Assembly (NCBI GenBank): GCA_002269645.1
Contig: NIVC01001755.1
Location: 1-64,000, forward strand
Direction: 5' to 3'
DNA: 64,000 nt
From: Macrostomum lignano
Taxonomy: Eukaryota
Shown in pieces: positions 2,711 through 60,141 of the stretch (the stretch's first letter is position 1; every line of letters starts with the position of its first letter). The notes below the pieces were generated by a model. The model did not search any database and was not told where the DNA came from. It saw nothing but the letters and a program-made list of their open reading frames with translations. Both the position numbers and the translations under genes were made by a program.

Positions 2711-5371
2711 TTAACAAACGTAAGCTCTGATGGAGGCCAAAATAGTCTCATTGCACCCTGGGCAGCGGCTGTGGTTTCGGCAGCATCCTTCGCACAGCAG
2801 AAAGTGAGCACAGGGCAGGGTTACCCTGTCCCTGATCCGGCTTCTGCACTGCAAGCACCGGTCATCGGGCACGTCTCGGCTGTCTTGCTGCTGCAGTTGT
2901 TGTTGCTGCTGTTGCTGCTGCTGCTGCTGCGGTTCCATTGATGCTGCTGTTGTCGTCGGAGCGAACGATGGTGGATTGCTGGCCGGTCCAGCAGTTCTCG
3001 ACTCTTCCCTATTAAGAGATAATTGCAGCAATTCTCTGAAGAAGTCAATTAGGGAGTGACATAAAAATAGTTAGTTTTTAGAGTCTCCTACACTGCAAGC
3101 GATGAATACGCATTCGCCGAGGAGAGTTGCTAGCACCCTGACGCAACGCCTTCAACGATACTGTTACGTAGCAAGCACACAATCATACACATGCTCACAC
3201 GGGGTGTACAGCGGCCCTGACTTTCTAATCGTGTCAGGCATCGCCCCTGACTAAGCCATTTAACCCTGATGCTCTTTTCAAAAAAGATTTCATGACAGAT
3301 GGAAATAACAAGTCGAAATATCCCGAGCTTTTGTGAAGACAAAAGACATATTATATGTAAGACGTCTTACCTGACGTTAACTTGCTCCATCAAGGTGGCC
3401 GAGTCCTCAAACTCTTCCTCGCCGCTGTGCACCAGCTGAATGGCATCGCCAGGCCTGTTCACCGCCGCGCCCTGGTGCCGCATAAAGTATCGCGCGGCGC
3501 AGAAGTCCAACTTTTGCTGCTGGATGCCGAAGCTGGCGGCCCGAGACAGCACGGGACTGTCCAGCACCTGGCCGAGTCGGGTCAGAGATCGCTGCAGTTT
3601 GGACAGCTCGCCAGCATCCAGCGCGCTGCGGCGTGTCTGCGGCGTCAGAACGAGTCTGTGAGCCAGTCGCTGCAGGTAGCAACCCGGACTGGCCTGTCGG
3701 TGTCGCGACCAGCTATCAGCCTCAGCCAAACTGCTACTGCCAGGACATGCGGCACCGCAGTGAAAACAGACGATCTTTCCACTCCCCGAGACCTCAGCAA
3801 CCATCCAGTCGGGTGTTCCACTCGGCAGACGCTGGTTTTGGCGAGCAGTGGTACTGGTGAAGCTGGGTTTCACCGAAGAGGTCAGAATGAGAATGGCGCC
3901 GGCTATAAGAAATTAAGACATATTTTGCATTAGTTTTGGTAAACAAAATTTAAATGTAGCTGAAAGAAAGAGAAGAACTTTTAATTCCTTAGAAGGTCAT
4001 CACACAGTTTTAACAAACTTATGAGTACATTTCACTGACTTGGATTTCGCACTGACCAGACAATTTCAGAATAGATTCAGAATCTTACTTTAACTATAAA
4101 ATTCAAAGTGTTTTACACTCTAACTTGATTTATGAACTTTTGATTTTATAGAAACATGATTTTTATGTTTCAATCTTTCACAGGTGCGTACGTCGAACAC
4201 TATTCAGTATAGGTGAGCAATGCCAGGCAAATCAATCCTCAGACCATGGGCTCGGAACCTTGCAAGGGGTAAAAATTCAAAAGGGATCTTAAACATTGAG
4301 AGTGTCGAGTTTTTCTGGTTAAGCTGTTAAAAGCCTCATCGTAATCCAGTGGTGTAACAGCACAGTGACACAACTGACTAGAAGTGACACAGTCTAACAG
4401 CGCACAGTGACACAACTGACTAGAAGTGACACAGTCTAACAGTACACAGTGACACAACTGACTAGAAGTGACACAGTCTAACAGCGCACAGTGACACAAC
4501 TGACTAGAAGTGACACAGTCTAACAGCACACAGTGACACAACTGACTAGAAGTGACACAGTCTAACAGTACACAATGACACAACTGACTAGAAGTGACAC
4601 AGTCTAACAGTACACAATGACACAACTGACTAGAAGTGACACAGTCTAACAGCGCACAGTGACACAACTGACTAGAAGTGACACAGTCTAACAGTACACA
4701 ATGACACAACTGACTAGAACTGACCCAGTCTAACAGCGCACAGTGACACAACTGATTAGAAGTGACAGTCTAACAGCGCACAGTGACACAACTGACTAGA
4801 AGTGACCCAGTCTAACAGCGCACAGTGACACAACTGACTAGAAGTGACACAGTCTAACAGTACACAGTGACACAACTGACTAGAAGTGACACAGTCTAAC
4901 AGTACACAGTGACACAACTGACTAGAAGTGACACAGTCTAACAGCGCACAGTGACACAACTGATTAGAAGTGACACAGTCTAACAGTACACAGTGACACA
5001 ACTGATTAGAAGTGACCCAGTCTAACAGCGCACAGTGACACAACTGATTAGAAGTGACCCAGTCTAACAGCGCACAGTGACACAACTGATTAGAAGTGAC
5101 CCAGTCTAACAGCGCACAGTGACACAACTGATTAGAAGTGACCCAGTCTAACAGCGCACAGTGACACAACTGACTAGAACTGACGCATGCAGTGCCATTT
5201 ATACAATTAGCTACATGTACGTTATATAATTGACTCACCTCCAACGAACAGGGACTCGCTGGCGTCATCAGCCAGCAGTGCTTCAGCCGCCTTATCCGCA
5301 ATTTGTCGCGGTAAAAAGCTGGCCAAAATCCCAACCAGTCGGCTTTGTAAGTTTTGTTGCTGCCGTTGCAT
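2711..5371 (-). CDS. Inhibitor-of-apoptosis-like protein: degenerate BIR + UBA-like + polyQ + C-terminal RING, about 320-330 aa
   Basis: Exons 5371-5239 (phase 1), 3902-3371 (phase 2), 3035 (or 3008)-2711; phases match. BIR-like CFHC-x18-H-x6-C. UBA-like SPVLSRAASFGIQQQKL..GDAIQLV. IAP-type RING CLQC..LPCAHFLLCEGC..CPGC..IRAYVC*. Exon 1 is assigned from donor sequence and phase only. Confidence 0.82.
4362..5185. repeat. 42-bp minisatellite, about 19 copies, in IAP intron 1
   Basis: Unit ACAGCGCACAGTGACACAACTGACTAGAAGTGACACAGTCTA; 14-aa periodic ORFs. Confidence 0.96.
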
Positions 5372-11155: not shown

Positions 11156-12209
11156 CTAATGTTGACCGGACTCATCAGCCGCGATGGGGAGCCTCAGCTT
11201 GCGCTTCTTCTCCTTGCAGCGCCGGTTCTGGAACCAGACTCGAACCACCCGGAGGGGCAGACCGGACAGCTCGGCCAGACGAACTTTGGTCAAAGTGTCC
11301 GGCCTCGAGCATTGCGAGTAGGCGTTGAGCAGCATCTGCTGCTGACTAAAAGTTAGAGTGGTACGAGGTCGTCTTGCGATCGGGCCAACAGTTGAGAATA
11401 GTAGCGTCGGGTTGCTATGGAAACCTGGCACATTTTGGTTTGACTGGTTTCCATGACAACCCATAACGTCTTGGGTTGGCTGCTTGCTATGCCAACCATT
11501 GTCGCCTCGGACTGCCGCGTCACCAACGTGAGCGCCATCGGTTTGGTTGCTAGGGTAGTCCTGATCCTGCGATATGTCCTCGTATTGGGCTATGTGCAGC
11601 GGCTGCTCCACCGGGCTACTTGTTGTATCCTGGTTGCCATGGTAACCCGGGCCAAATAGATCGCTTGGCCCCCGGTTGTCTAAATCTGAAATTAGTGCAT
11701 AAGATGTGTTTTGAATACTCGTAAACTCGTTACCAAGGCAACGGGGTTGGCTCGCTCACCAATAGTCTCCTCGCTGTCGACTCCATCATCGGCGGCCACT
11801 ACTGGGTGGTCGGCGGCGCTGATCTGGTCGGCGGAGGCCCCGCAGGTCAGGGCGAAGTGGGCGAGGCAGAGCGGGCCGCGGCCGCAGGACAGGCCGAACA
11901 GCTCGCCAGTCTGCAGCCTGCGGTTGCAGTCGCCGCAGCGGAGACAATCGGCGTGGAAGATAAGGTCGCGAGCTCGAATCACATAGTCGTTACGGTGGAT
12001 CACCAGGTTACAGGCGTGGCACCGAGGAGAGAAAAGACTGGAGTGGGTTGGGGAAGCGGTTTGATTAGATCAATTAATCAATCAATAAACCAACCAACCA
12101 ACCAACCAACCAGCCAATCAATCAATCAATCAATCAGTCAATCAATCAGTCCATCAATCAATCAATCAATCAGTCAATCAATCAGTCAATCAATCAGTCA
12201 ATCAATCAG

Positions 12210-12260
<51 letters not shown>

Positions 12261-12382
12261 GTCAATCAATCAGTCAATCAATCAGTCAATCAATCAATCA
12301 ATCAACCAATCAATTAATCAACAAATCAATCAATCAATTGATCAATAAATGAATCAATCAACTAACCAACCAACCAACCAAC

Positions 12383-12421
<39 letters not shown>

Positions 12422-13349
12422 CTAACCAACCAACCAACCAACCAACCAACCAACCAACCAACCAACCAACCAACCAACCAACCAACCAACCAACCAACCA
12501 ACCAACCAACCAACCAACCAACCAACCAACCAATCAGTCAATCAATTAATCAATCAATCAATAAAACCAATATACAAACAATCAATCAATAAATTAATAA
12601 ACCAATCAACGAATAATACAATCAATCAACGAAAAAACAAACGATCAATTAAACAATTAATCTTTAAATCTATTAATTAAACAGTCAAACAATTGATCAC
12701 TCTATCAATCCATCCATATTTATACACCTACTTATTACTTATCTCGTATTAATAAATAATAAGTATCTAAACTGGAGCTGTGATTCCCCAGCTGCTCACC
12801 TTCGGCAATGTCGGCTGCAGAAGTTCATTTCATTCCTTGAGTGGCAGACCCGTAACTTGGCCAGCTCCTTGCCGCAGGCGCAGCACAGCAGGCAGCCGCG
12901 GTGCCAGCACTGCTGGCCGGGACTCAGCTCAATAAGAAACTGATCGAGAATGGCGAAGCCGCAGCCGGAGCAAACGGGTGGCTGCTGCGGTGTGACCGGG
13001 GACGGTCCGGCGGCTGGGAGACAATTTTGAGGATTGGCGTTGATGAAGAGGCGGGGGTTAAAGGTGGCGCCACCCATCAAATGAAATGGCGCCACCATTT
13101 GAAAGAATAGCGTCAACTCTTAAATAAAATGGCGCCAACTCTAAAATAAAATGGCGCCAACTCTAAAATAAAATGGCGCCAACTCTAAAATAAAATGGCG
13201 CCAACCCTCAAATGAAAAGGCGCCAACTCTCAAATGAAAAGGCGCCAACCCTCAAATGAAAAGGCGCTACCCCTCAAATGAAATGGCGCCAACCCTCAAA
13301 AAAATGAAATTATAATTGGCTTACCTTCATTCATTGGCGCCATTGTCAT
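11156..13349 (-). CDS. islet: Islet-class LIM-homeodomain transcription factor (2 LIM + HD), divergent, about 368-383 aa
   Basis: Exons 13349-13325 (tentative micro-exon; otherwise ATG at 13098), 13118-12800, 12037-11760, 11685-11156, all in phase. LIM1 [18 protein letters not shown]; LIM2 [15 protein letters not shown]; [43 protein letters not shown]. DQxxxxxSP, NDxVxRAR, RPD and RVWFQNxRCK are Islet-type signatures. Confidence 0.9.
11411..11646. promoter_or_regulatory. Cluster of RFX X-box-like 14-bp palindromes inside coding exon
   Basis: GTTGCTATGGAAAC 11411-11424, GTTTCCATGACAAC 11447-11460 and GTTGCCATGGTAAC 11633-11646 fit GTHNYY-AT-RRNAAC. Degenerate copies at 11483 and 11546. Function untested. 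Confidence 0.5.
12062..12660. repeat. Compound (AATC)n/(AACC)n microsatellite in Islet-like intron
   Basis: Direct reading. Confidence 0.96.
13064..13300. repeat. 23-bp tandem repeat (AAATGGCGCCAACTCTAAAATAA), about 10 copies, overlapping the 5' end of the Islet-like CDS
   Basis: GGCGCC recurs every 22-23 nt. Confidence 0.9.
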
Positions 13350-13659
13350 TGATCGAGTATTGAAGCTATTCGACATTTCTTGGGACCGAAATGAAAGTCA
13401 GAATTTGTGCAACTTTTAAACACAGAAGTGTCTTGCGTTTTGGTTTAAAAATGAAAAAGGGTTCTTTTAATTATTTTTTTGGCTTGCAGGTTATTACAAT
13501 GGTTCTGTTGGTTGGGGTTGCTGTAACCTGCGGCAGCCAATGATAGGAAGGGTTAGCCTGAAGCTGCAGGTCTCTACGAGAAGGTGAAAATGTGTGAAAA
13601 GTTTGAGCCGCATGTTTTTATGCTTACTTTTTAGCCCTATTAAAGATGGCAATCGAGTA

Positions 13660-14245
13660 GGGATTTGAGCTGGGATTTGAGCAGAAGTTTGAGCAAATAT
13701 TTGAGCAGTGATTTGAGCAGAAATTTGAGCAAAAGTTCGAGCAGGGATTTGAGCAGAAATTTGAGCAAAAGTTCGAGCAGGGATTTGAGCAGGGATTTGA
13801 GCAGGGATTTAAGCAGAGATTTGAGCAGAAGTTTGAGCAAATATTTGAGCAGGGATTTGAGCAGGGATTTGAGCAGGGATTTGAGCAGGGATTTGAGCAG
13901 GGATTTGAGCAGGGATTTGAGCAGGGATTTGAGCAGGGATTTGAGCAGGGATTTGAGCAGGGATTTGAGCAGGGATTTGAGCAGGGATTTGAGCAGGGAT
14001 TTGAGCAGGGATTTGAGCAGGGATTTGAGCAAAAGTTCGAGCAGGGATTTATGCAGGGATTTGAGCAGGGATTTGAGCAGAAGTTTGAGCAAATATTTAA
14101 GCAGGGATTTGAGCAGGGATTTGAGCAAGAAATTGAGCAAATATTTGAGCAGGGATTTATGCAGGGATTTATGCAGGGATTTATGCAGGGATTTATGCTG
14201 GAATTTGAGCATAGATTTGAGCAGAGATTTGAGCGGGGATTTGAG
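13660..14245. repeat. 12-bp minisatellite (GAGCAGGGATTT)n
   Basis: Direct reading; SRDL/LLKS periodic ORFs. Confidence 0.96.
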
Positions 14246-14741
14246 CACAGTATCTAACTAAGACTCAAAATGATTTTTTGTTCAATTTATTCTGATTTAA
14301 TAGAACCTGTGTTTATGAACGAAATATAGAAAGGTCATCGACTTAAATAATTTGAGACCTGCATTGTTCTCAGCTAATTATTGGTGGAAAGACAAAATGC
14401 AGAAAAAATCCGTGACATTTTTGAGGTGTGGATAAAGTTTTGCGTTACAGGTGAATGCAGCAGGAACTGAGCGGCGCAACCCCTGCAGCGATTTTGCTTG
14501 ACACACTCGAAATAATTTTCTTTTAGAAAGCCTTCTAATGGAGCCTTTGGTAGGCGTAGTCACGACTGACTCTTTTGTTGATGCAATTTTCTTACACTTA
14601 TCACTCTGAGTCTGCTCTGTGCCTGTGCTCGCATCAGAGTCAGCGCCTCATCAGAGTGTGAGAATAAGAGGATGACAAAGGCTTTTCAATTTCGCCTTAA
14701 AATTCATATCTCAATGATGGTAAAACTTATAATTTATCAAT

Positions 14742-16535: not shown

Positions 16536-17276
16536 TTAGTTCTGCAGGCTGTACTTCACCCAGCCTGGGTTCGTCTCGATGCTCTCCTCCACTTGGGCAT
16601 CCGTGAACAGCAGCAGGCGGCAGTCGTGCAGCTTCCTGTGGTACAGCGCATGTCGGCAGGTTCTCGCTCGCATGCAGGCGGCCACGCATGCGACCGAATT
16701 TTTCACCTTCTTCAGATCGCTATAGCAGTACTCGGTGTTGCGGTTGAAGTGCCGAGCCTTGAAAGCTGCTGGTCTCAAAGTGGTTTGACTCGAAGTTTCA
16801 GTCTGCAGCGCGGCGACGTATTCACACATGAAGCCGCGCAGGTTCGAGCAGGGGAGATCAGCCAACTTGCCCGGAGCATTTTGCTGCATGATTAAACAGT
16901 CCTGGTTTTTGTCAATATTATTAGGTTCTTCGGTCCCCCACAATGTATCATTAAGCGGCAGAACTCCTTTGTTGTTGATCAAATGCCAGCTAGACCTGCT
17001 CCTGTCTCTCTCGTCAGGCAAGTCGGTGACTCCAAGCCAAAGATGATTGGGAACCGAAATTGACATGCTGCCAAGCAGGATCAGGGTGCCGTAGTTGCTG
17101 ACCAGCTCGCCTCCAATGGACATGCACTCAGCGTTCGCTTTGCACCACGTGTAACTGTTTAACTCACTAATATGGACGCACTTGCCAGCCCGGAGGCTGT
17201 AAGGCTGGGGGCACAAACTACCGAATGCCAGTGGCAGGAAATTTGCAAACCAAATATTCATTGAAAGCAAACGCAT
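16536..17276 (-). CDS. Intronless secreted C-type lectin (EPN motif) with C-terminal PAN/apple-like domain, 246 aa
   Basis: Hydrophobic N-terminus; CTLD C..GKC..WCKANAEC..GGELV..LWLG..WGTEEPNN..QDC..LADLPC..FMCEY; C-terminal C..ACVAACM..CRHALY..CRLL. Confidence 0.9.
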   Translation of the reverse strand: MRLLSMNIWFANFLPLAFGSLCPQPYSLRAGKCVHISELNSYTWCKANAECMSIGGELVSNYGTLILLGSMSISVPNHLWLGVTDLPDERDRSRSSWHLINNKGVLPLNDTLWGTEEPNNIDKNQDCLIMQQNAPGKLADLPCSNLRGFMCEYVAALQTETSSQTTLRPAAFKARHFNRNTEYCYSDLKKVKNSVACVAACMRARTCRHALYHRKLHDCRLLLFTDAQVEESIETNPGWVKYSLQN

Positions 17277-17764: not shown

Positions 17765-18650
17765 TCTCAGTGTTTTAGAGTCAGTATCTCAGTATCTCAG
17801 TATCTCAGTGTCTCAGTTTCACAGTGTCTCAGTATCTCAATGTCTCAGTAACTCAGTGTCTCAGTGTGTCAATGTGTCAGTGTGTCAGTGTGTCAGTGTG
17901 TCAGTGTGTCAGTGTCTCAGTGTGTCAGTGTGTCAGTGTCTCAGTGTCTCAGTGTCTCAGTGTGTCAGTGTGTCAGTGTCTCAGTGTCTCAGTGTCACAG
18001 TGTCTCAGTGTCTCAGTGTCTCAGAGTCTCAGTGTCTCAGTAACTCAGTGTCTCAGTGTGTCAATGTGTCAGTGTGTCAGTGTCTCAGTGTCTCAGTGTC
18101 ACAGTGTCTCAGTGTCTCAGTGTCTCAGTGTCTCAGTGTCTCAGTAACTCAGTGTCTCAGTGTGTCAATGTGTCAGTGTGTCAGTGTCTCAGTGTGTCAG
18201 TGTGTCAGTGTGTCAGTGTGTCAGTGTGTCAGTGTCTCAGTGTCACAGTGTCTCAGTGTCTCAGTGTCTCAGTGTCTCAGTGTCACAGTGTCTCAGTGTC
18301 TCAGTGTGTCAGTAACTCAGTGTCTCAGTGTGTCAGTGTGTCAGTGTCTCAGTGTCTCAGTGTCTCATTGTCGCAGTGTCTCAGTTTCACAGTGTCTCAG
18401 TATCTCAATGTCTCAGTAACTCAGTGTCTCAGTGTGTCAATGTGTCAGTGTGTCAGTGTCTCAGTGTGTCAGTGTCTCAGTGTCTCAGTGTCTCAGTGTC
18501 TCAGTGTCTCAGTGTCTCATTGTCTCAGTGTCTCAGTGTCTCAGTGTCTCAGTGTCTCAGTGTCTCAGTGTCTCAGTGTCTCAGTGTCTCAGTGTCTCAA
18601 TGTCTCAGTTTCTTAGTATCTCATTGTCTCAGTGTCTCAGTGTCCCAGAG
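17765..18650. repeat. 8-bp (TGTCTCAG/TGTGTCAG)n satellite
   Basis: Direct reading. Confidence 0.96.
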
Positions 18651-18883: not shown

Positions 18884-21800
18884 TCACTTTCTATCAACGC
18901 CTGTCAGCGGACGAGTGAGCTTCTTCTCCTCCATCAACGCCTCGACCAGCATCCGCTTGTAGGCCTCCCAATCCATGGCTGACTGCAGCCGGCGCTGCAG
19001 CTCCTCGCGACTCGGAAACTGATCGATCTGGTTGCGCAGCCTGTCCAGCAGCTTTCTGGGCGCCTGCTCGATGAAGAATTGCCGGTCGAGCAGTAGGCAT
19101 TCCGCCCCGTTGCTAACCACGCACAGGCTCGGCTGTTGGTTGCGCTGCGACGAGCCCGTCGGCTGCTGGAACAGGTGCTGAAGACCGAAGACGCCACCAC
19201 GGGTCAGGGTGCACAGGCGAACGAACTCAGGACTACCCGATGCCGGCAGTTCCTGCGTTGAAATATCTCTTTATGGTTAATGGCTTAGTAGATATGGGTT
19301 TCCTCCGCTGAAAGAGTATGTACGCAGCTTTCTACAATTGAAGTGTTTTATTTAATTAAAATTGCATCGTTTTCCTAGAAAACTTAGAAAGTGCTACAAT
19401 TGAAGTGTTTTATTTAATTAAAATTGCATCGTTTTCCTAGAAAACTTAGAAAGTGCTACAATTGAAGTGTTTTATTTAATTAAAATTGCATCGTTTTCCT
19501 AGAAAACTTAGAAAGTGCTACAATTGAAGTGTTTTATTTAATTAAAATTGCATCGTTTTCCTAGAAAACTTAGAAAGTGCTACAATTGAAGTGTTTTATT
19601 TAATTAAAATTGCATCGTTTTCCTAGAAAACTTAGAAAGTGCTACAATTGAAGTGTTTTATTTAATTAAAATTGCATCGTTTTCCTAGAAAACTTAGAAA
19701 GTGCTACAATTGAAGTGTTTTATTTAATTAAAATTGCATCGTTTTCCTAGAAAACTTAGAAAGTGCTACAATTGAAGTGTTTTATTTAATTAAAATTGCA
19801 TCGTTTTCCTAGAAAACTTAGAAAGTGCTACAATTGAAGTGTTTTATTTAATTAAAATTGCATCGTTTTCCTAGAAAACTTAGAAAGTGCTACAATTGAA
19901 GTGTTTTATTTAATTAAAATTGCATCGTTTTCCTAGAAAACTTAGAAAGTGCTACAACTGAAGTGTTTTATTTAATTAAAATTGCATCGTTTTCCTAGAA
20001 AACTTAGAAAGTGCTACAATTGAAGTGTTTTATTTAATTAAAATTGCATCGTTTTCCTAGAAAACTTAGAAAGTGCTACAATTGAAGTGTTTTATTTAAT
20101 TAAAATTGCATCGTTTTCCTAGAAAACTTAGAAAGTGCTACAATTGAAGGCGAACTATATTTTTTAACTTTTTGTGTGATAATGGTGTCTTCAATTAATT
20201 TGTTATAACTATTTGACTTTTAATCCTAAAAAATGCTATAATTGTTTCATTCTTCTCTAACCTAGATTGCTGTCTTGTTTATCCACGACGCAGGCATCCC
20301 CTTTTGAATTAAGGAGCTCAATGGTTCAAGGGTTCTCAGAAAACATGATTGTGGTCATGCAAGATGAATCAGACACAGGAAGTTAAATTTCTCAAATCAA
20401 AGCCAAAATAATTGAATTTATTCGATTCTCTTAGTACAATCACTGAGTTGGTTAGATGACGTCACTCACCAGCACTCCGTCGTCCAATTCGTCATAGAAC
20501 GTCTTTCGTCCCATTCGAACGGTTGTTGAACCGTCTTGGCCTTGAACTGGAAACGCATCAGAGTAAAGTGTATCGATGATAATGAACGCTGTTATGAAGG
20601 TAGACACATTTTTGTCAGGCGAGTTTACATGTAGCATGGAAGGCATGTAAGAGAGTGAAGATATGTACACTCTCTGTGGATCATGGCTAAAATTAAGTTA
20701 AATCAAGCCCTCTTCGATGTAAATCGCAGGTCGCAAAACGTTGGAGTTGGTGTTGGACCCATGTACCGCGAGCTTGCTTCAAACCTGTCAGTCGCAGTTA
20801 GTTTGAAAATGAACGTCCAGCTCACTCACCAGACTCCTCCTTGGAGAAAAAGTTGGCCTGAAAGTGTTTAAATGAGATAGTTTATTAAATATTTGATCTG
20901 TGTGTAAACTCTTCTAAAACAAATTCGATTAAGTCACAAATGTTCAAGCGCCCACCATTGCTTGACTCTTAGTCTCAACGCTCAACGGTCGCTGCTGCTT
21001 CAGCCTGACTCTACCGGCGGATTTAGCCGCAGAGCCGCGAGCTCTCGCGCCTCTGATACTCGCAGCATTTTGCGAAGTCAAAGTCGCGGCAGCTACCGTC
21101 AGCGGTCTGTCTGGACGGTCAACCAACTGTAGCTGTCTGCTCTCAGCGCCGGCCGGCAGTGCCGACCTGGCCAGTCGGAACATCCCAGTGCTGTCGTAGA
21201 ACTGCCACAAATATGGCGCGGCTTCTTCAATGAGGCGCCGCTGGTGGCTGGTTTGCAGCAGCTCACCGGATGCGTTGGCCACTAGCGGTTGCGTCTTTTG
21301 TAGAGCAAACAGTACTTGAGCGCTTCCCTTGATATCGGCGAAAAAAAGGCAAAATTCTGTTAATAATTAGATGATTCAGTAACGTAATAAGGTGCATTAA
21401 AACCAGCTATCCACGCAGCCTGCTCTAATGGGCAGCTGTGCAACCGACAGCTCAGCCGCAGCTATTGCGCGGCGCATCTGAAGGCATCTGAAGGCTCATC
21501 CCGTGTTGATTGACAGTCGATAAAAAGCCGATAAACGGTAGAATAAACAATCGTAAAAGACATCGTTTAAATATAAATTTTACTGCCCGAGATAAACATA
21601 CATATTATTTCCAGATAAATGTGAGCAACATTTCTGTTTCTAAGCCAAATTGTCACATTTATTATTTTTATTATTCTTTCTTTTTCAAAACGAAAACCCG
21701 GAAAACCACAGTAATATGTAAATGTTGCAAAGAGCACAATGCACTCACAGACTTGACAATGTAGATCCATCGGGATGCACGGCTGTTCTTTACCATTACA

Positions 21801-27190: not shown

Positions 27191-27796
27191 AATTATTTTC
27201 ATTGCAGAAAATTTGTGGTTTTCAAACTTCGCAAACCCCCCTCCCCTGACCTTCAGTTGCATCGATCAGCTGCCATTTTCCTGCCGATTATTAGCCACAA
27301 TCTGCCTCAAGTCGGAGTTTTTACCTAAGACGGAAACCCAGTTGACTAAATTTGAAACGCTATGTATCAATCTTTCCAGACAGAATGTGCGATCTAAGAA
27401 CCACAACTTCATTATGAGCTTTGACAGCCTCGAATGCATTTGATAGTTTTTTCTTGAAAAACATGTTAGTGCACCTCGGATAAACATACGCATGAATGGA
27501 CTTGCTGAATTTTGCAATTACTAAATCGAAAATTTTATAGCTTGTACAATGATAATTCAAGCTTCCAATATCGCTAATAGAGTTTGAGGCGAAAAGCAGC
27601 GTAGAAAATTGCACGATATAGCCAGTGCAGCGTCCTTTTGTATTACTATTATGCATCTATTTATGACTGGGCACTATATGGCGTCAGGGATGTCATGAAG
27701 CCATGCAAGCATCAGCAGCCAATGAAATTCACGTGTTTTTTCAGGTATATTGTATTATCTCAGCAGGCAGATAAATGCCTGTTGAAATACACTCTG

Positions 27797-28981
27797 ATGC
27801 TGGAGTTTTCAACTGAAATCCAACACATCAGACTCATGACCCGCTTTAGTTTACACCGACTGACTGCGTCTCTCATTCTCTGGCTTACTCTGCTGTCGGT
27901 AGCCAGAATTGTGCTCAACCCGGATGTACTTTTCCCTTCACACCGGCCGCTCTCCAACTCAAGCGGCGGTCCCAAGCTGCGCGATCGAGCACCCGTCAGC
28001 GCTCCGGCTCTGCCATGCGAGAACCGGCTGGTGTTCAAGGACTTGTCCTCAAATCTGAAGATTCCCAGAATCATTCACTTCACCGCCAAGAGCGAGTTCA
28101 TGCTCAACAACTACAAGCGCTACCTGAAGCGGTGGTACGAAAGCTACTCTAACTTTACGTTCTACCTGTGGCGAGATGCAGACGCTCTGTGCCTTTTGCG
28201 ACTTCACTATCCGGAGCTGCTTGAAGAGTTCGAGAGCGAGCTGCAGACACCGTTGGAGCGGTCAGACTTCATCCGAGCACTGGCGCTGTACCACTTCGGA
28301 GGACTGTACGTGGACATGGACACTCTCCCAGTCAGGAGCATGGAGCACTTGTTCGACAATCCGATGAGAGGCGCCATGGTCGCACAGGAGCCGGCAGAGC
28401 ACGCCGTCTTCCTGTACAACTTGAAGTCGCTGGTGTCGAACGCCGTGATGTTCGGCATTCCGAAGCACCCATTTTATTACTACTACGTGTGCAAGATGCT
28501 CGCCAAGATCCGCAACCTCTCACCGAGTCCCAACCGCATGAGGACCAACTTCGAAGCCACTCACATCACGGGTCCGATTCTGATGAAGCAGGTGCACGAG
28601 AACTACACCCAGCTCGGTCTGTGCCCAGCCGAACAGGTCAACTGCTCAGTGCACCTGTTTAAGCCGGACGAATTCAGTCCGAACTACGACACGATCCAGA
28701 AGCGTCGCATCGAAAACATCTGCGTGCGGTACTTCAAGCTGCTCAATAGAGAACAGAGACGGCTCTGTAACAGTCTATTAGAGCGTCGGTTTATTCACAG
28801 AAGGCTCAGTCTGCCGACGCTCGCAGTGCACGAATTTCAGCACTTAAGCGGGTACCGACGAAAGCCAAAATCTTTAGATGTGAAGAAGAATCAGAGCCAG
28901 GTGTTGGTCAGTGATTACTTTAATATATTGACGGTCATTCCGCCGATAAAATGGTACGATTCTACACAGAATCAGTGCTGA
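27797..28981 (+). CDS. Intronless GT32-family (alpha-1,4/mannosyltransferase-like) type II membrane glycosyltransferase, copy A
   Basis: TM LTASLILWLTLLSVARIVL; IPRIIHFT; RSDFIRALALYHFGGLYVDMD (DXD); SNAVMFGIPKHPF; TGPILM. Start is 27797 or 27836, not the track's 27638. Confidence 0.9.
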   Translation: MLEFSTEIQHIRLMTRFSLHRLTASLILWLTLLSVARIVLNPDVLFPSHRPLSNSSGGPKLRDRAPVSAPALPCENRLVFKDLSSNLKIPRIIHFTAKSEFMLNNYKRYLKRWYESYSNFTFYLWRDADALCLLRLHYPELLEEFESELQTPLERSDFIRALALYHFGGLYVDMDTLPVRSMEHLFDNPMRGAMVAQEPAEHAVFLYNLKSLVSNAVMFGIPKHPFYYYYVCKMLAKIRNLSPSPNRMRTNFEATHITGPILMKQVHENYTQLGLCPAEQVNCSVHLFKPDEFSPNYDTIQKRRIENICVRYFKLLNREQRRLCNSLLERRFIHRRLSLPTLAVHEFQHLSGYRRKPKSLDVKKNQSQVLVSDYFNILTVIPPIKWYDSTQNQC

Positions 28982-30054
28982 TTTCCTAACTGTGATTCAA
29001 TTAATCTTTCGTTCATTGCTTAGAAGAGACAATTCTGAGTATGAGTACATTTGTAATCTAATGAAGTACTATATTTTCTTTTCTGTGAATGCAATAGTTT
29101 AATTGGTGTCTTGTGGCTGGTGTCTTCGAGTGGAACGGTCGTGAATTGCAAACAGGATGTCTCTAAACTGCCTCACTGCATATGCATGCTTCAGATATCT
29201 TCTCATTTTTTATATTGATAGCGAATACAAAATGACAATCGTCCAAAATCTTCAGTCTTACTGGATTCCTTATTTGATACGTGCTTTTCTGCCTATCTTC
29301 AACTTTTTTCATTGAGACACTATTTGAGCTGCTGGACAATTTATTTTAATACCAATTTAGATAGAAAAAACTGTATTGATAATGAGAAACGCCTTCACCC
29401 GTCTACACACCCGGCTAAATGCTCAGAGCAAAACTCATTTTCAGAGTTGTTTTTGAGATCACCTGACAGCCTAGCAGGAGGCTTTACAATACCGCAGACA
29501 ATTAGGCAAGCACACGTGTGTGAGCCGTCATGCTGGTCTGACTTTCTGAGTCTGTATATCTGAGTCTATCCCAGAATTCAAGCTATATAATTTAATCTAT
29601 CGTTTTCACGTTCAGAACTGAATTTATAGGTCTGGAAAATGTCTCCTTCATACACGTAAAAGTACTTGCAGTTGCAAGTGCTAGTGTTGTATTTTTTGCT
29701 TCCGTCCGTGTGGGCCGCAGACGGGGTGATCGGGGGTTCGGGGGTCGGACTGCCCAGAGCTTGCCGGGTGTGATAGGCGAGAGAGTGGCGACCCCCGAGG
29801 CGTACGGACACTTCGAGGTGGAAGTGGAGAGCCTGGGAGCGTACAGACACTCGTCCAGCATGGAATATTGTAGGAATACATGTCGACCCTTGTAGTACAT
29901 AAACGAGTTGAAAATTGCTCATGCCTCTTAGCTGCATGGCGGTCCGAAGACGCAGCGTGGAGGCGAGCGTCGCCCATTCCGCAATGCTCATGCCTCACGC
30001 TGCTCAAACTGCTTTTGAAGCGCCAGCTCGATGAAAATTCGATGAAGATCTGAG

Positions 30055-30458
30055 CCAGCACCAAGGGGCGCCAGCACCAAGGGGCGCCAGCACCAAGGGG
30101 CGCCAGCACCAAGGGGCGCCAGCACCAAGGGGCGCCAGCACCAAGGGGCGCCAGCACCAAGGGGCGCCAGCACCAAGGGGCGCCAGCACCAAGGGGCGCC
30201 AGCACCAAGGGGCGCCAGCACCAAGGGGCGCCAGCACCAAGGGGCGCCAGCACCAAGGGGCGCCAGCACCAAGGGGCGCCAGCACCAAGGGGCGCCAGCA
30301 CCAAGGGGCGCCAGCACCAAGGGGCGCCAGCACCAAGGGGCGCCAGCACCAAGGGGCGCCAGCACCAAGGGGCGCCAGCACCAAGGGGCGCCAGCACCAA
30401 GGGGCGCCAGCACCAAGGGGCGCCAGCACCAAGGGGCGCCAGCACCAAGGGGCGCCAG
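30055..30458. repeat. GC-rich 16-bp minisatellite (CCAGCACCAAGGGGCG)n, about 25 perfect copies
   Basis: Direct reading; 16-aa (48-nt) periodic ORFs. Confidence 0.97.
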
Positions 30459-32483: not shown

Positions 32484-33641
32484 ATGAAACCGAGACGACT
32501 AACCTGCCTTATCGTTCAACGCAGACTGGCTGCGTCCCTGATGCTCTGGGTTACTCTGCTGTCGGTAGCCAGAATTGTGCTCAACCCGGATGTACTTTTT
32601 CCTTCACATCGGCCGCTCTCCAACTCAAGCGGCGGTCCCAAGCTGCGCGATCGAGCACCCGTCAGCGCTCCGGCTCTGCCATGCGAGAACCGGCTGGTGT
32701 TCAAGGACTTGTCCTCAAATCTGAAGATTCCAGAATCATTCACTTCACCGCCAAGAGCGAGTTCATGCTCAACAACTACAAGCGCTACCTGAAGCGGTGG
32801 TACGAAAGCTACTCGAACTTTACGTTCTACCTGTGGCGAGATGCAGACGCTCTGTGCCTTTTGCGACTTCACTATCCGGAGCTGCTTGAAGAGTTCGAGA
32901 GCGAGCTGCAGACACCGTTGGAGCGGTCAGACTTCATCCGAGCACTGGCGCTGTACCACTTCGGAGGACTGTACGTGGACATGGACACTCTCCCAGTCAG
33001 GAGCATGGAGCACTTGTTCGACAATCCGATGAGAGGCGCCATGGTCGCACAGGAGCCGGAAGAGCACGCCGTCTTCCTGTACAACTTGAAGTCGCTGGTG
33101 TCGAACGCCGTGATGTTCGGCATTCCAAAGCACCCGTTTTATTACTACTACGTGTGCAAGATGCTCGCCAAGATCCGCAACCTCTCACGAGTCCCAACCG
33201 CATGAGGACCAACTTCGAAGCCACTCACATCACGGGTCCGATTCTGATGAAGCAGGTGCACGAGAACTACACCAGCTCGGTCTGTGCCCAGCCGAACAGC
33301 TCAACTGCTCAGTGCACCTGTTTAAGCCGGACGAATTCAGTCCGAACTACGACACGAGCCAGAAGCGTCGCATCCGGTACACCTGTATTCGGCGCTACAG
33401 GACTTTAAAAAACCAACAGCGGCGACTCTGCAACAGTCTGCTTTACCGCAGGTTTGCAAACAGAAGGCTCACACAGAAAACATTTGCGGTCCACGATTTC
33501 CGGCACTTCAGCACCAATAAGCAGAAGAGAAAGTCGTCTAAGAACAGACAGAAGGGTTTAGTTCTGCATGGGCCTTTGTTTAATGCTTTCACAGTTATTC
33601 CTAGTCTGAAACAGTTTAATTCCACTGAGGAGCAGTGCTAA
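32484..33641 (+). CDS. GT32 glycosyltransferase copy B, three single-C deletions (assembly error or young pseudogene)
   Basis: Near-identical to copy A over 32551-33373. Frameshifts at about 32730 (TTCCAGA vs TTCCCAGA), 33188 (TCACGA vs TCACCGA) and 33272 (ACACCAG vs ACACCCAG). Confidence 0.85.
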
Positions 33642-37458: not shown

Positions 37459-38990
37459 TCACAAGTTGGCCCGCCGCAAAGAAATTGTATAGTAGGAGAA
37501 GCAAACGATGGACACAAGCTGGCACACAGTGCTTGCCACGCCTCCGTACATGTAGCAGACGTAGCCAAAGCACTCCGGTATGCTAGCAGCAGTCCCAGGG
37601 GCCGTGGAATTGAACGCGACGCCGCCTGTCTTATCACCGGAAGTTGTTCGAATTTGAGCGTCGTACAGAGCGCCGAATTGCAGAATAAGAAGCAGGCCAG
37701 TTGTTGAAGCTAAAAGAAGACAGGAAGAGTAGAGCCGTCCGAACAGGTGCGGCTTTTCAGTCATAGAGATGATCACGGGTGGAATGGTGAATAGGGTGGC
37801 GTTGTTGATACTATCAAAAACGTAGGCCGTAATCGTAATACCAAAAGCTGACACGCCTGGAAGCAGTGGGACGCTAAGAAGCAGCGTCGAAGGAGCGCCG
37901 AAGCAGACCACGCTGGCAAGCAAAACAGCAGATCGATGACTTGCCTTCGGTAGGTGTCTGTCAGTAAGAAGCCCAATCAGACAGCGCCAAGCTATGCCCA
38001 CCAGAGTTGGAAACCAAAAATAGTAAACGTCGTATTGAGTCAGCGACAAACTTCGAGTGACGCTAGTCAGGTTTAGAAAGGTTGTCAGGTTTGCTCCGAT
38101 GGACAGAGCAACGCCCAGCATGAGAGGCATGAAGCGATCTGAGCAGCACACGGTAAAAAAGTATTGTGTCTGCGTCAGGAAACCGTCCTGCGGTCGAGTG
38201 TCGATCGTCTCAGCCGTCGCAGTATGCGTTTCGTTCATGTTAGAGTTGAATGCATCCTGTAGTTTCTGTCGATCCTGTTCCGGTGGCTGTTTGTCTAGAA
38301 TAGGGCTCGATTCGCTAGGTTTTTCTTTATCCAAAGAATCATCGAACGGTGTTAGAAAGATAAAAGCGAACACATGAATAGTGGCATTTAAAACTAGGAG
38401 CACGATCCGGGTGCCTACAGGTCTCTGGTCGGTGTTACTTCTGTGCATATTGTCGAAGACCACGTAGTAGATGAAGGCCACAACTGGGGGACCCAGACTG
38501 AAGAAGTTGTCCGCCAGCGTCATGACAAAGACACGTTGACTCGATGAGAAACTTTTCATGCAGCAACCAATCGCAGCCACGTAGCTGTAGTTGAAGCTGT
38601 GACCGTACAGGAACAGCAGAATGAACAGCAGCCATAAGTTCTGGCGCAGCGGCTCTGGATACGCCATTGCGACGGCAACAAAAGTCATGGACAGCGTGGA
38701 GAGGACGCCACTGAAGACGACCGAAGCTCTCGTACCAAAACGGTCGTAAAAGAGTCCGCTGAGAAAGATTAGCACTGTTCCCAGGTACAGTAGAGCAACG
38801 CTAAAGTCCAGTTGTCTCTGGTTTAGTCCATAGCTGAACTTTATGAAATTGGCAAATATAGGGCCTGAGACACACTGGCCAGCCATCATCAGAATTAAAC
38901 AGGCGCTCATTAGCAGAAGGCATTTTCGCCGAGAAGTCTCCGTCATGCAGACATTTTTCACCGTTTCCGGTTGCTGCTTAGTATCATCCA
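37459..38990 (-). CDS. Intronless MFS transporter, nodulin-like/Mch1-type, about 510 aa
   Basis: Multiple hydrophobic helices in two halves with a hydrophilic central loop; GLFYDRFGTR and GLLTDRHLP loop motifs; N-terminal KFSYGLNQRQLD and CCMKSFSSSQR resemble the nodulin-like (PF06813) pattern. First ATG at 38990. Confidence 0.85.
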
Positions 38991-39984
38991 TTAGTGAAGA
39001 AAACACTGCGCCGGAAACTTAGTTTCTAATTAGTTTTATAGATGTGTAGATCGGTAAAATACCTGGTATGTGGCGTCTTAAGCGAGAAATGTTCAGTTTA
39101 GGAGCTTGTGGATCTTGCTCTGGGTTTTTTATGGCACCCTAACTATAGCTTTTTTGAATTCTTCTCCGCCTTGTCCTGCACTGCTCTATATAATCGGAGG
39201 AAATTATTGGGTGCGCGATCTGTTACGCAAAAATATTATAGGCGATTAAAACTGTAAGCTCAACCCCGGATCGAGAGTTAACCAGCTGTACCGGGAGTTC
39301 ACATTCTCATATTAAATGACTTCGATCCCTTCTTTTCAATTGCTCAACTATAATTCACATTGGTACATTATTAAGCTCAAGCATTTCATAACCACCCTGA
39401 GTAAATACAGCACTATATCATGCCAGAATTATTTAATGCAAACTCATGTGGACTGAGAATGCTCACTCTGAAAAAAACCCGTGGCCTTGCAGTTGCTTTG
39501 ACTCAATGCAGCGCCCCCCCCCCCCTGTATCTTATTTCGGACTCAATACGAGCTAATCTACATGCATGAGCAACTGGGCTCAAAATGGGATCCGAAATAA
39601 GCAAACTATATATTGCATGTTAATATATAGCGAAGACACCCCTACGCAGGCAGGCAATTCTCGTGGACAGAATTGAACTCCTGACATAAATTTCCGCTCG
39701 CGTATACTAATAAACAGCGAAATTAAGTCGCTTAGCTATATACTGTGCGTTCAATTATTCAGCCAATGTAGTTCAATTCAAAGGCGGCTCGAGTTTCTAT
39801 TCAGAAACCTATGAACAAGCATGTGGGTAACGTGATCTACAATATTGGGTGTGGTTACGTGCATACATGTACGAGTATATCCGATACATGTATGCACTAT
39901 AGCTATAGCTATAGCTATAACTAGATATTTGAAGGGCGAGGGCCTTTCAAAACCGCAAAGCTCACGTTACCCTCATACGGTGGA

Positions 39985-44631: not shown

Positions 44632-45099
44632 TTGCCTCGAACTGCTGTCCAGTCGTTAGTTCTGCAACTAGCAACGTTCCTAACTCTGCATTCGCCAAAA
44701 GGAACGACCGCTATTTCAATGGTCTTGGTTTTTCTTCGCTATTTAGCAACCCAGGAGTCCTACGAATCTATTGGAACAGTTTTTGACTTATCTAAGAGCA
44801 CGGTTTGTCTTATAATCCGAAGGGTTCTAAGTGCAATGTCCGAGAGTGGATTTTGCAGAGATCTGGTTCGATTTCCATCCTATGAAGAGTGCCACAAGCA
44901 TGCTCAGTTATTCAGTCAGCGATCTAGAAGTTTCTTTACAGCAAGTATTATTGGTGCCATTGACGTAACGGAAGTCAAAATAAGATGTCCGTCTGACAAT
45001 GGCGAGTCATATTACAACAGGAAGCAATTTCATTCCGTCAAGTTACAGGTAATTAGCACCAGTTCGACCTACATCATTGACTATTGCAAAAGGACGTGA
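44632..45099 (+). mobile_element. PIF/Harbinger transposase (HARBI1-type DDE nuclease) fragment
   Basis: FLRYLATQESY..FDLSKSTV..RFP..IIGAIDVTEVKIRCP..YYNRKQFHSVKLQ; C-terminal DDE part not found. Confidence 0.85.
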
Positions 45100-58262: not shown

Positions 58263-58817
58263 GATTTGTAGGTGCCAAAGCAAAACTAAGTTTTTTAATT
58301 GCTTCTTCAATTGAACTGAAGCCCTTGGTGTTCTTAGTGCGTTAGAGTTTTATCGGCATTTTTTGCACCAATAATAATGCTAACTGTTTATGAACAAATC
58401 AATTTGATAAATGCTCTTTTGAAAACTTTCTTTCTTTACGTGTGTATCTGCTGGTTATGACATTTTCTATTATATTATAGCTATTCACAATATAACTGTA
58501 CTAAAGCGGTGTCAATAGCCTAAATGTTCAATGAAGAAGTGTCTTCATAAATGTGCTTTTAATTTTAAAAAAAGTATAACAAAGTAGTTACAAGCGTATT
58601 TTGCAAAAACATTTTTATTTAAAATAGCTCTGCATTAGTATTAATTAATGTTACAGATAGGCTTACTCATATAAATTATAATTATGTGTAAAAGTATTTA
58701 TTTTATTGTGCTCTAGTGACAGGCGCACATACAGGGCATATCTATCCAAACTACTATGTGGATCCAGTTCGTTTTACAAGTACTTTTGTATTTGTGAGAT
58801 CGTTGCATGCGGAAGAG

Positions 58818-59968: not shown

Positions 59969-60141
59969 GGGGACTCAATGCTTGAAAATCAGTTATCAGC
60001 CACAAGAGGCGTTAGTCATTGTTTAAAAAAGATAAGGATTAATCTTCTTTCTATCTGCAAACTGTGAGTGATAAATTAAAACAGGCATTCATTAGTAATT
60101 TCTCATTACTGACGAAGAATCATTCGTGTGCCAAATCGACA

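What the first reader, a model, noticed from the sequence alone, without database searches (positions are those of the whole stretch)
11411..11646. RFX X-box palindromes written into the coding linker of an Islet-like gene (candidate dual-coding regulatory exon)
Seen: three perfect matches to the 14-bp X-box GTHNYY-AT-RRNAAC within 236 bp, plus two degenerate ones. All five sit in the same codon phase and encode a recurring peptide (YHGN, YPSN, WHSK, CHGN, FHSN) between LIM2 and the homeodomain. My estimate at equal base frequencies is about 3e-6 per position, so three by chance is implausible. Established: X-boxes are the RFX/DAF-19 sites that control ciliary genes, and canonical Islet linkers have no such repeat. 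Inference: either an exonic RFX enhancer or sink coupling this TF to the ciliogenesis programme, or a mobile palindromic motif that colonises coding DNA.
Basis: partly seen in the sequence, partly recalled or inferred. Interest (0 to 1): 0.75.

Follow-up and report, generated by a model that had tools for sequence, protein, structure and literature searches.

The report
X-box palindrome cluster in Islet-like gene
Six copies of a 14-base palindrome that reads like the binding site of the cilia regulator RFX sit in the last exon and adjacent intron of an Islet-type transcription-factor gene; they are not chance, probably spread by local duplication and inverted copying, and whether RFX uses them is untested.

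Summary
Three perfect GTHNYYATRRNAAC matches (11411, 11447, 11633) and two decayed ones (11483, 11546) lie in one codon phase. They sit in the LIM2-homeodomain linker of a minus-strand, three-exon, Islet-class LIM-homeodomain gene. I found a sixth copy in the 74-nt intron just upstream (11729-11742).

Four copies score 17.9-22.2 bits on a matrix built from 30 validated C. elegans X-boxes. They are the only sites of at least 16.7 bits in the 64 kb (0.12 expected). Two are letter-identical to validated nematode X-boxes and one to a human X-box shown to bind RFX1 and RFX2.

The peptide alone does not explain this: the chance of three or more X-boxes given the peptide is about 1e-4, and one copy is non-coding. 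Adjacent copies (R0:R1, R4:R5) are reverse complements of each other even at the two free motif positions. That points to in-frame duplication plus short inverted, template-switch-like copying of one quasi-palindrome in a tolerant linker.

Selection for RFX binding is hinted at (p about 0.05) but not shown. No orthologue exists in any collection searched, so the decisive cross-species test could not be run. There is no sign of a dispersed mobile motif.

The parts
11729..11742 (-). R0: intronic X-box copy GTTGCCTTGGTAAC (plus strand GTTACCAAGGCAAC). Both half-sites are perfect and the centre is TT.
   Evidence: family D1, inverted pair I5. Scores 17.9 bits and is letter-identical to the validated dyf-2 X-box. 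In register with the exon-3 frame.
11633..11646 (-). R1: perfect X-box GTTACCATGGCAAC, encoding (G)YHGN.
   Evidence: Scores 22.2 bits, above all 30 validated sites. 13 of 14 bases are complementary to R0.
11546..11559 (-). R2: decayed copy ACTACCCTAGCAAC (3 mismatches), encoding DYPSN.
   Evidence: Scores 8.2 bits.
11483..11496 (-). R3: decayed copy GTTGGCATAGCAAG (2 mismatches), encoding GWHSK. Its 36-nt unit is homologous to the R4 unit.
   Evidence: flank identity 9-10 of 18, against 1-7 for other pairs except the overlapping R4-R5 upstream comparison. Scores 10.4 bits.
11447..11460 (-). R4: perfect X-box GTTGTCATGGAAAC (plus strand GTTTCCATGACAAC), encoding GCHGN.
   Evidence: Scores 20.9 bits and is identical to the validated bbs-9 X-box.
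11411..11424 (-). R5: perfect X-box GTTTCCATAGCAAC, encoding GFHSN.
   Evidence: Scores 20.9 bits. Identical to the core of the human DCDC2 X-box EMSA probe.
11409..11462 (-). Inverted-repeat pair R4:R5: 22-nt arms, 82% complementary, 10 nt apart. Potential RNA or DNA hairpin.
   Evidence: I1; I4. RNA fold of 11403-11468: -26.4 kcal/mol, z = -4.76.
11156..11685 (-). Exon 3: linker (about 98 aa, 79% polar or small residues), homeodomain (about 11204-11374), short tail, stop codon TAG at 11156-11158.
   Evidence: Stop-free run of 199 codons in this frame only.
11686..11759 (-). Intron 2: 74 nt, donor GTGAGC, branch-like CTAAT, acceptor TTTCAG. Contains R0.
   Evidence: Sequence. The splice joins restore the frame.
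11760..12037 (-). Exon 2 (end of LIM1, LIM2, start of the linker).
12038..12799 (-). Intron 1, almost entirely an (ATCA)n microsatellite.
12800..13098 (-). Exon 1 (N-terminus and LIM1). The 5' end runs into a 22-nt minisatellite, so the start codon is uncertain.

Best explanation
The cluster is a young, lineage-specific family of six copies of one quasi-palindromic 14-18-mer (G-GTTNCC-AT-RGNAAC-CAG). It grew inside the unconstrained LIM2-homeodomain linker of an Islet-class gene. Growth was by in-frame local duplication (shown: one shared phase, and the 36-nt R3/R4 units). It was followed by short inverted, template-switch-like copying or homogenisation between neighbouring copies (inferred: R0 is the reverse complement of R1, and R5 of R4). 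The ancestral unit happened to spell a top-quality RFX X-box, and the copies inherited it. The GxHGN peptide repeat is a passenger of the DNA repeat rather than its cause. On this reading the X-boxes are a by-product: RFX proteins would very probably bind such DNA in vitro, but the sites were not built or kept for regulation.
For: (1) All spacings (96, 87, 63, 36, 36 nt) are multiples of 3 and the phase is identical, which means descent by in-frame copying. (2) Flank homology appears only in the R3/R4 36-nt units (9-10 of 18). All other comparisons share only the core, with flanks at random level (1-7 of 18), apart from R4-R5 upstream, which rereads those same tails. Short-tract copying would give this pattern. 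(3) Adjacent copies are mutual reverse complements: R0:R1 has 13 of 14 Watson-Crick pairs, and R4:R5 has 12 plus 1 G-U. Both free N positions pair in both couples. Column permutation gives P = 0.011 for all adjacent pairs and 0.0013 for the best two. Read as codons, the variable residue (Y, C, F, C) is the complement of the wobble base of the Gly/Ser codon in the partner copy. Nucleic-acid pairing therefore sets that residue, not protein function. (4) The intronic copy matches only over the 14-mer. (5) R2 and R3 have lost X-box-critical bases, so there is no uniform maintenance. (6) The locus sits in exceptionally repeat-prone DNA: 36 tandem-repeat rows in 64 kb, intron 1 is (ATCA)n, and a minisatellite abuts exon 1. 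(7) The mechanism has precedent. Template switching homogenises short inverted repeats inside coding genes (PMC8604942) and creates hairpins (PMC8794818). (8) The repeat is absent from 140 related LIM-homeodomain proteins, and the linker is 79% polar or small residues.
Against: The four strong copies differ from one another at five positions (4, 5, 7, 9, 11), all tolerated by validated X-boxes, and at none of the critical ones. The rare codons GGT (17% outside the repeats) and CAT (25%) are used 4 of 4 times each. Meanwhile the X-box-free wobble positions do vary (GGC/GGA/GGT, TGT/TGC). My hand counts give p of about 0.05-0.07 for this asymmetry. By the same kind of count, 7 of 12 minimal changes are X-box-tolerated against 31% expected (p about 0.05). 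All five disallowed changes fall in just two copies. These are hints of purifying selection on the X-box itself. No outgroup is available to show an actual template-switch event, and an ancestral unit scoring 22 bits is itself a rare coincidence.
Confidence: 0.45

Rival explanations
1. A selected homotypic cluster of RFX sites inside the gene: an intragenic enhancer, silencer or RFX sink. Four high-affinity X-boxes in intron 2 and exon 3 are bound by RFX dimers and couple the Islet-like gene to the RFX programme. The sites were amplified in frame, and the peptide repeat is the price paid.
For: The sites are as good as or better than validated ones: 22.2, 20.9, 20.9 and 17.9 bits against a validated median of 17.8. 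They are the only such sites in 64 kb, with 0.12 expected. Three are letter-identical to the bbs-9, dyf-2 and DCDC2 X-boxes; RFX1 and RFX2 bind the DCDC2 probe in EMSA. One copy is non-coding, so it is not held by the peptide. Rare codons are retained, and variation is confined to X-box-tolerated positions (and hand counts, p about 0.05). Precedents exist: genes with several X-boxes, and two X-boxes in MAP1A exon 1 bound by RFX1/RFX3 as a repressor element (PMC3245922).
Against: Validated X-boxes lie mostly within about 250-500 bp upstream of the ATG (PMC1794439; PMC3245922). These lie about 1.4-1.7 kb downstream of the putative ATG, in the last intron and exon. RFX binding does not require adjacent sites to be complementary at the N positions, yet they are. 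Two copies have decayed. There is no orthologue, expression or binding data. The first-stage scan had a large look-elsewhere effect.
Confidence: 0.3
2. RNA-level helices are the selected feature. R0 (intron) pairs with R1 (exon 3), looping out the branch point and 3' splice site. R4 pairs with R5 to form a 17-22-bp hairpin in the coding region. Possible roles are splicing control, an editing duplex, small-RNA production or ribosome pausing.
For: The minimum-free-energy fold uses exactly these two helices. The R4:R5 hairpin folds at -26.4 kcal/mol with z = -4.76. The R0-R1 segment has z = -2.86. Complementarity at free positions looks like covariation. Only six close-range inverted repeats of this size occur in the 64 kb.
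Against: Any inverted copying produces these helices automatically. The 391-nt region as a whole is only z = -1.69. The helices are short (14-17 bp). There is no Rfam match. There is no transcript or cross-species covariation data.
Confidence: 0.1
3. A protein-level short linear motif, G-aromatic-H-G/S-N-Q, repeated in a disordered activation or linker region. Codon identity is simply inherited from recent duplication.
For: Exonic copies are conserved beyond the 14-mer: leading G in 4 of 5 and a following Gln codon in 4 of 5. The decayed copies keep an aromatic residue and the polar pattern (DYPSNQ, GWHSKQ). The linker is polar and probably disordered.
Against: The chance of three or more X-boxes given the peptide is about 1e-4. 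There is a copy in the intron. Cys sits at the 'aromatic' position, and that residue tracks the partner copy's wobble base. The motif is absent from 140 homologues. Flanks are at random-level identity while the core wobble bases are unchanged.
Confidence: 0.1
4. A mobile palindromic motif that colonises coding DNA.
For: Short palindromic core with unrelated flanks. Copies in both exon and intron.
Against: There are no further copies in the other 63.7 kb. Sites with 1 mismatch or fewer outside the cluster are at or below the shuffle expectation. No other site reaches 16.7 bits. All copies share one reading phase. 14-18 nt is too short for any known element.
Confidence: 0.02
5. Chance occurrence of X-box-like strings.
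For: None beyond the look-elsewhere effect of the scan.
Against: 0 of 100 shuffles reach the observed count. Four sites of at least 16.7 bits against 0.12 expected, with a maximum of 2 in 300 shuffles, and all lie within 332 bp.
Confidence: 0.005

Closest known systems
X-box promoter motifs of RFX/DAF-19 target (ciliary) genes
   Same: Same 14-bp imperfect palindrome. R4 and R0 are identical to the validated bbs-9 and dyf-2 X-boxes, R5 to the human DCDC2 X-box, and scores are within or above the validated range.
   Different: Validated sites are single or double and lie about 60-285 bp upstream of the ATG (one at -767). Here four strong sites lie in the last intron and coding exon of a transcription-factor gene, and no binding or expression data exist.
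Exonic X-box pair in human MAP1A exon 1 bound by RFX1/RFX3 as a repressor (as cited in PMC3245922)
   Same: More than one X-box inside an exon of a neuron-related gene, proposed to act on that gene.
   Different: MAP1A's sites are in the first exon, next to the transcription start. Here they are in the last exon and intron, in frame within coding sequence, in greater number, and untested.
Template-switch (quasi-palindrome) mutations that homogenise short inverted repeats in coding DNA and create hairpins (PMC8604942, PMC8794818)
   Same: Short arms (14-22 nt), short spacers (10-82 nt), complementarity restored at otherwise free positions, multi-base changes that rewrite adjacent codons, and no flank homology.
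   Different: No ancestral state is available here, so the event itself is inferred. Here the arms are themselves palindromes and number six.
In-frame coding mini-repeats in disordered regions of transcription factors
   Same: One phase, spacings in multiples of 3, a 36-nt (12-aa) R3/R4 unit, a polar linker, and a repeat-rich genome.
   Different: Tandem Repeats Finder sees no array. Most copies share only the 18-nt core. One copy is outside the coding sequence.
Rickettsia palindromic elements and other in-frame palindromic insertions (from my own knowledge, not tested)
   Same: Palindromic DNA tolerated in frame within coding sequence.
   Different: Those are 100-150-bp dispersed bacterial elements. 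Here the core is 14-18 nt, confined to one gene, with no dispersed copies.

Membership tests
X-box (RFX binding site) | Match to the 13-15-bp imperfect palindrome consensus or matrix | tested here: met
   Three exact GTHNYYATRRNAAC matches. Four sites of 17.9-22.2 bits on a matrix from 30 validated sites.
X-box (RFX binding site) | Bound by an RFX protein (EMSA, ChIP or DAP-seq) | not testable with these tools
   Indirect only: identical sequences are validated elsewhere.
X-box (RFX binding site) | Gene expression depends on the motif or on RFX | not testable with these tools
   No expression data. The source organism is unknown.
X-box (RFX binding site) | Located in the proximal promoter (typically within 500 bp upstream of the ATG or TSS) | tested here: not met
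   The sites lie in intron 2 and exon 3, 1.36-1.69 kb downstream of the putative ATG at 13098. Typical positions are given.
X-box (RFX binding site) | Conserved in orthologues | not testable with these tools
   No close orthologue in 5.8 billion or 1.84 billion proteins, or in metagenome contigs.
Islet-class LIM-homeodomain gene | Two N-terminal LIM domains followed by a homeodomain | tested here: met
   Pfam LIM (2 stretches, E = 4.5e-15) and Homeodomain (E = 2.5e-14).
Islet-class LIM-homeodomain gene | Islet-type homeodomain signature (WFQN-K-R-C-K) and best similarity to Islet/LIM-7 | tested here: inconclusive
   The query has WFQNRRCK. 47 of 140 homologues have KRC and none has RRC. Best hits are Caenorhabditis LIM-7 and an Islet-type protein at 32-37% identity. 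It is divergent.
Islet-class LIM-homeodomain gene | C-terminal Islet-specific (Lhx3-binding) region | tested here: not met
   In this gene model the reading frame stops 14 residues after the homeodomain. A further exon cannot be excluded.
Template-switch-derived inverted repeat | Neighbouring arms complementary beyond what their composition predicts, without flank homology | tested here: met
   (P = 0.0013-0.011). Flanks are at random identity.
Template-switch-derived inverted repeat | A multinucleotide change relative to an ancestral or outgroup sequence that creates the complementarity | not testable with these tools
   No outgroup sequence is available.
Coding tandem repeat | Head-to-tail units homologous over their whole length | tested here: inconclusive
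   Only R3/R4 (36 nt) show it. TRF finds nothing at score 30.
Mobile palindromic element | Dispersed copies elsewhere in the genome | tested here: not met
   None in the rest of the window. The genome-wide test was not possible.
microRNA precursor or other known RNA family | Match to a curated RNA family | tested here: not met
   No Rfam hit at gathering score. Only chance-level hits with E above 0.07.

The most novel reading that the evidence does not exclude
The cluster is a selected, homotypic RFX element built into the gene body by in-frame amplification of a binding site. RFX occupancy of four high-affinity X-boxes in intron 2 and exon 3 would either switch the Islet-like gene on or off in ciliated cells, or drive an internal promoter. 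That promoter would yield a LIM-less homeodomain isoform starting at the in-frame ATG at 11464-11462, which lies about 170 and 265 bp downstream of R1 and R0, the usual X-box-to-ATG distances. The GxHGN peptide repeat would then be a passenger of regulatory DNA. This would be a clean natural case of transcription-factor sites dictating protein sequence.
Probability: 0.27. Interest if true: 0.75.

Novelty: new variant of a known kind. Interest (0 to 1): 0.5.

Why it matters
If RFX uses these sites, this is an unusually clean case of dual-use codons. A high-information palindromic site would have been amplified in frame, so that the DNA motif dictates a peptide repeat in a developmental regulator. 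It is directly testable, because three synonymous changes per copy (GGT to GGC, CAT to CAC, AAC to AAT) destroy the site without touching the protein.

If it is a by-product, it is a useful warning. Palindromic transcription-factor motifs can multiply locally by duplication and template switching, producing site clusters that look like enhancers and would be called RFX targets by motif-based screens. It would also show nucleic-acid pairing rules, rather than protein function, choosing amino acids in a linker: Y, C or F is set by the partner copy's wobble base.

Tried and rejected
**Searches that found no usable relative**
- A word-indexed search of the full protein found only Caenorhabditis LIM-7.
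- An exhaustive HMMER search of 1.84 billion representatives gave a best full-length hit of 32% identity.
- The metagenome scan found only homeodomain-level matches at 43-73% identity and no linker homology.
- As a result, the synonymous-site test across species could not be done.

**Attempts to identify the source**
- Exact-product look-ups of two single-exon ORFs in the window found nothing.
- The RFT1 fragment is only about 35% identical to any animal RFT1. This looks like a long-branch animal lineage that the collections do not hold.

**Other negative results**
- Rfam returned nothing at gathering score or by E-value.
- Tandem Repeats Finder found no array in the exon.
- The peptide motif occurs only singly, and in unrelated positions, in 140 homologues.

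**Readings rejected**
- Chance.
- A dispersed mobile motif.
- The whole linker being an intron: a 199-codon open frame exists only in the coding phase, and the splice phases fit.
- An acceptor at the CATAG of R5: it would be out of frame with the homeodomain (reasoned from the sequence).
- A known pre-miRNA.

Full report
**What is there**

The region lies on the minus strand of a three-exon gene.
- Exon 1 is 12800-13098, exon 2 is 11760-12037, and exon 3 is 11156-11685.
- Intron 2 (11686-11759) is 74 nt, with donor GTGAGC, a CTAAT branch-like site and acceptor TTTCAG.
- Intron 1 is almost entirely an (ATCA)n microsatellite.
- The joined 1107-nt reading frame encodes 368 residues with two LIM domains and a homeodomain (Pfam).
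- The closest proteins are Caenorhabditis LIM-7 and Islet-type proteins at 32-37% identity.
- The homeodomain carries WFQNRRCK. The Cys is the Islet hallmark: 47 of 140 homologues have KRC and none has RRC.
- 'Islet-like' is therefore fair, but the gene is very divergent and, in this model, ends 14 residues after the homeodomain.
- The linker is coding. Only this frame is open, for 199 codons, and GC at third positions (0.56) lies between the other exons (about 0.7) and the intron (0.35).

**The observation**

Three exact matches to GTHNYYATRRNAAC lie at 11411, 11447 and 11633.
- Each counts on both strands, giving 6 strand-matches against 0.30 expected; 0 of 100 shuffles reach 6.
- Two decayed copies lie at 11483 (2 mismatches) and 11546 (3 mismatches).
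- All five start at codon position 2 and encode GFHSN, GCHGN, GWHSK, DYPSN and GYHGN.

**Extension**

A scan allowing one mismatch found a sixth copy at 11729-11742, inside intron 2.
- On the minus strand it reads GTTGCCTTGGTAAC. Both half-sites are perfect and the centre is TT.
- The repeat finder independently groups it with the exonic copies (family D1).
- It is 96 nt from R1, so it is in register with the exon-3 frame, but an in-frame TGA in the donor precedes it (and the sequence).

I built a matrix from the 30 fourteen-base validated C. elegans X-boxes in Table 1 of PMC3245922.
- R1 scores 22.2 bits, R4 20.9, R5 20.9 and R0 17.9. The leave-one-out median of validated sites is 17.8.
- R2 and R3 score 8.2 and 10.4.
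- The four strong copies are the only sites of at least 16.7 bits in the 64 kb. Shuffles expect 0.12, with a maximum of 2 in 300.
- R4 is letter-identical to the bbs-9 X-box and R0 to the dyf-2 X-box.
- R5 is identical to the core of the human DCDC2 X-box probe, which binds RFX1 and RFX2 in supershift assays.
- Twenty Islet-type homeodomain loci from other animals (64.6 kb) contain no such site.

**Is the peptide the cause?**

No.
- Holding the protein fixed and permuting synonymous codons within the gene gives three or more X-boxes in 2 of 20,000 trials.
- With codon usage taken from outside the repeats, the three perfect sites have a joint probability of about 1e-5.
- The repeats use GGT 4 of 4 times and CAT 4 of 4 times. 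Elsewhere in the gene these codons make up 17% and 25% of Gly and His codons.
- One strong copy is non-coding.
- None of the 140 closest homologues has more than a single, unrelated occurrence of the peptide.

**How the copies are related**

- All spacings are multiples of three.
- Flank homology appears only in the 36-nt R3 and R4 units: 9-10 of 18 identical on either side.
- All other comparisons are at 1-7 of 18, apart from R4-R5 upstream, which rereads those same unit tails.
- So most copies share only the 14-18-nt core.

Neighbouring copies are reverse complements of each other rather than plain direct copies.
- R0:R1 form 13 of 14 Watson-Crick pairs.
- R4:R5 form 12 Watson-Crick pairs plus one G-U.
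- In both couples the two free 'N' positions of the motif pair perfectly.
- Permuting letters within motif columns gives P = 0.011 for all three adjacent pairs and 0.0013 for the best two. The test is post hoc.

In codon terms, the variable residue is the complement of the partner's Gly/Ser wobble base.
- TAC in R1 matches GGT in R0.
- TGC in R0 matches GGC in R1.
- TTC in R5 matches GGA in R4.
- TGT in R4 matches AGC in R5, with a wobble pair.

Nucleic-acid pairing therefore decides Y, C or F, not protein chemistry. This is the signature expected from short inverted (template-switch) copying or arm homogenisation. That process is documented inside coding genes, with arms of 7 bp or more and spacers of 70 nt or less (PMC8604942), and as a source of hairpins (PMC8794818). 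The surrounding DNA is extraordinarily repeat-prone.

**Hints of selection on the X-box**

- The four strong copies differ at positions 4, 5, 7, 9 and 11 only. Validated X-boxes tolerate variation at all of these.
- Synonymous variation appears at X-box-free wobble sites (GGC/GGA/GGT, TGT/TGC, CAG/CAA) but never at the three X-box-critical wobble sites.
- My hand counts give about p = 0.07 for this contrast (0 of 13 against 4 of 15).
- They give about p = 0.05 for 7 of 12 minimal changes being tolerated against 31% expected.
- The five disallowed changes are confined to R2 and R3.
- These figures are borderline and are partly affected by how the copies were ascertained. They do not decide the matter.

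**RNA level**

- The 66-nt segment around R4 and R5 folds into a hairpin of -26.4 kcal/mol (z = -4.76).
- The R0-R1 segment (z = -2.86) encloses the branch site and 3' splice site.
- The full 391 nt gives only z = -1.69.
- Such helices follow automatically from inverted copies.
- Rfam has no match.

**Verdict**

The cluster is real, far beyond chance, and nucleic-acid-driven.
- What is shown: the origin by in-frame duplication, and the inverted relationship of neighbouring copies.
- What is inferred: that this happened by template switching.
- Whether the sites are kept for RFX remains open.

My weights are:
- neutral by-product of local amplification of a quasi-palindrome: 0.45
- selected RFX element: 0.30
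- selected RNA helices: 0.10
- protein motif: 0.10
- mobile motif: 0.02

An exonic X-box pair acting through RFX1/RFX3 is already known in MAP1A (cited in PMC3245922), as are multi-X-box genes. The RFX reading would therefore be a new variant of a known kind, not a new category.

The decisive test is conservation of the critical wobble bases and of the intronic copy in relatives. It could not be run because no relative of this gene, or of this genome, is present in any collection searched.

Noticed in passing
window 12069-12714: Intron 1 of the Islet-like gene is almost wholly an (ATCA)n microsatellite: about 160 copies at 81% match.
   Followed up: partly
window 13065-13300: A 22-nt minisatellite (TGGCGCCAACCCTCAAATGAAA, about 11 copies) runs into the 5' end of exon 1. 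The putative start codon at 13098 and the first residues are made of repeat units, so the true N-terminus or an upstream exon is uncertain.
   Followed up: no
window, whole: The window has an extreme load of micro- and minisatellites: 36 TRF rows with score of at least 200. Examples are 933-1370 (ACAG)n, 4360-5184 (42-mer), 13655-14247 (12-mer), 17781-18648 (8-mer), 19332-20149 (62-mer at 99% identity), 30054-30458 (16-mer at 100%), 48834-51048 (24-mer) and 58815-61431. Many create long spurious ORFs.
   Followed up: partly
window 11721-11726: A forkhead-like core GTTTAC (minus strand) lies 2 nt downstream of the intronic X-box R0. Fox and RFX sites co-occur in some cilia genes (title of PMC3414849). 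This single 6-mer could easily be chance.
   Followed up: no
window 11453-11659 (+): A 68-aa antisense ORF starts at the ATG inside the R4 palindrome (GCC/TCC-ATG-A/G context) and stops just after R1. Each CCATGG core also supplies an out-of-frame sense ATG in a strong Kozak-like context. This is probably a side effect of the palindromes.
   Followed up: no
window 11462-11464: An in-frame ATG lies immediately before R4, about 170 bp and 265 bp downstream of R1 and R0. It could in principle start a LIM-less homeodomain-only isoform. No transcript evidence is available.
   Followed up: no
window 27638-28981 and 32681-33205: Two ORFs share a nearly identical stretch of about 165 aa: a local duplication of a DXD glycosyltransferase gene. 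Pfam gives Gly_transf_sug, E = 4e-11. A short 27-residue match to the TcdA/TcdB glycosyltransferase-domain family covers only the shared DXD region. It looks like an ordinary animal-type sugar transferase, not a toxin.
   Followed up: partly
window 53967-54941: An RFT1 (oligosaccharide flippase) homologue is encoded as one 324-aa open stretch. It is only 26-35% identical over most of its length to any animal RFT1 in 5.8 billion proteins; the best named hits are hemichordates, an annelid, a scorpion and bivalves. The source appears to be a fast-evolving, intron-poor animal lineage that is not in the collections.
   Followed up: partly
window 40297-41628 and 44632-45099: Transposon remnants: an ORF with an RNase H domain (the C-terminal part of a retrotransposon pol-like ORF), and a Harbinger/PIF-type DDE_Tnp_4 transposase fragment.
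   Followed up: partly
window 37459-39006 and 16536-17276: Single-exon genes: an MFS/Nodulin-like transporter (515 aa) and a C-type lectin plus PAN-domain protein (246 aa). A rhodanese-domain ORF lies at 48221-48709.
   Followed up: partly
window 11173-11255 (+): A weak Rfam hit to HOXB13-AS1_2 (19 bits, E = 0.076, gathering score 40) lies antisense to the homeodomain-coding part. It most likely reflects homeobox sequence similarity, not an RNA gene.
   Followed up: no
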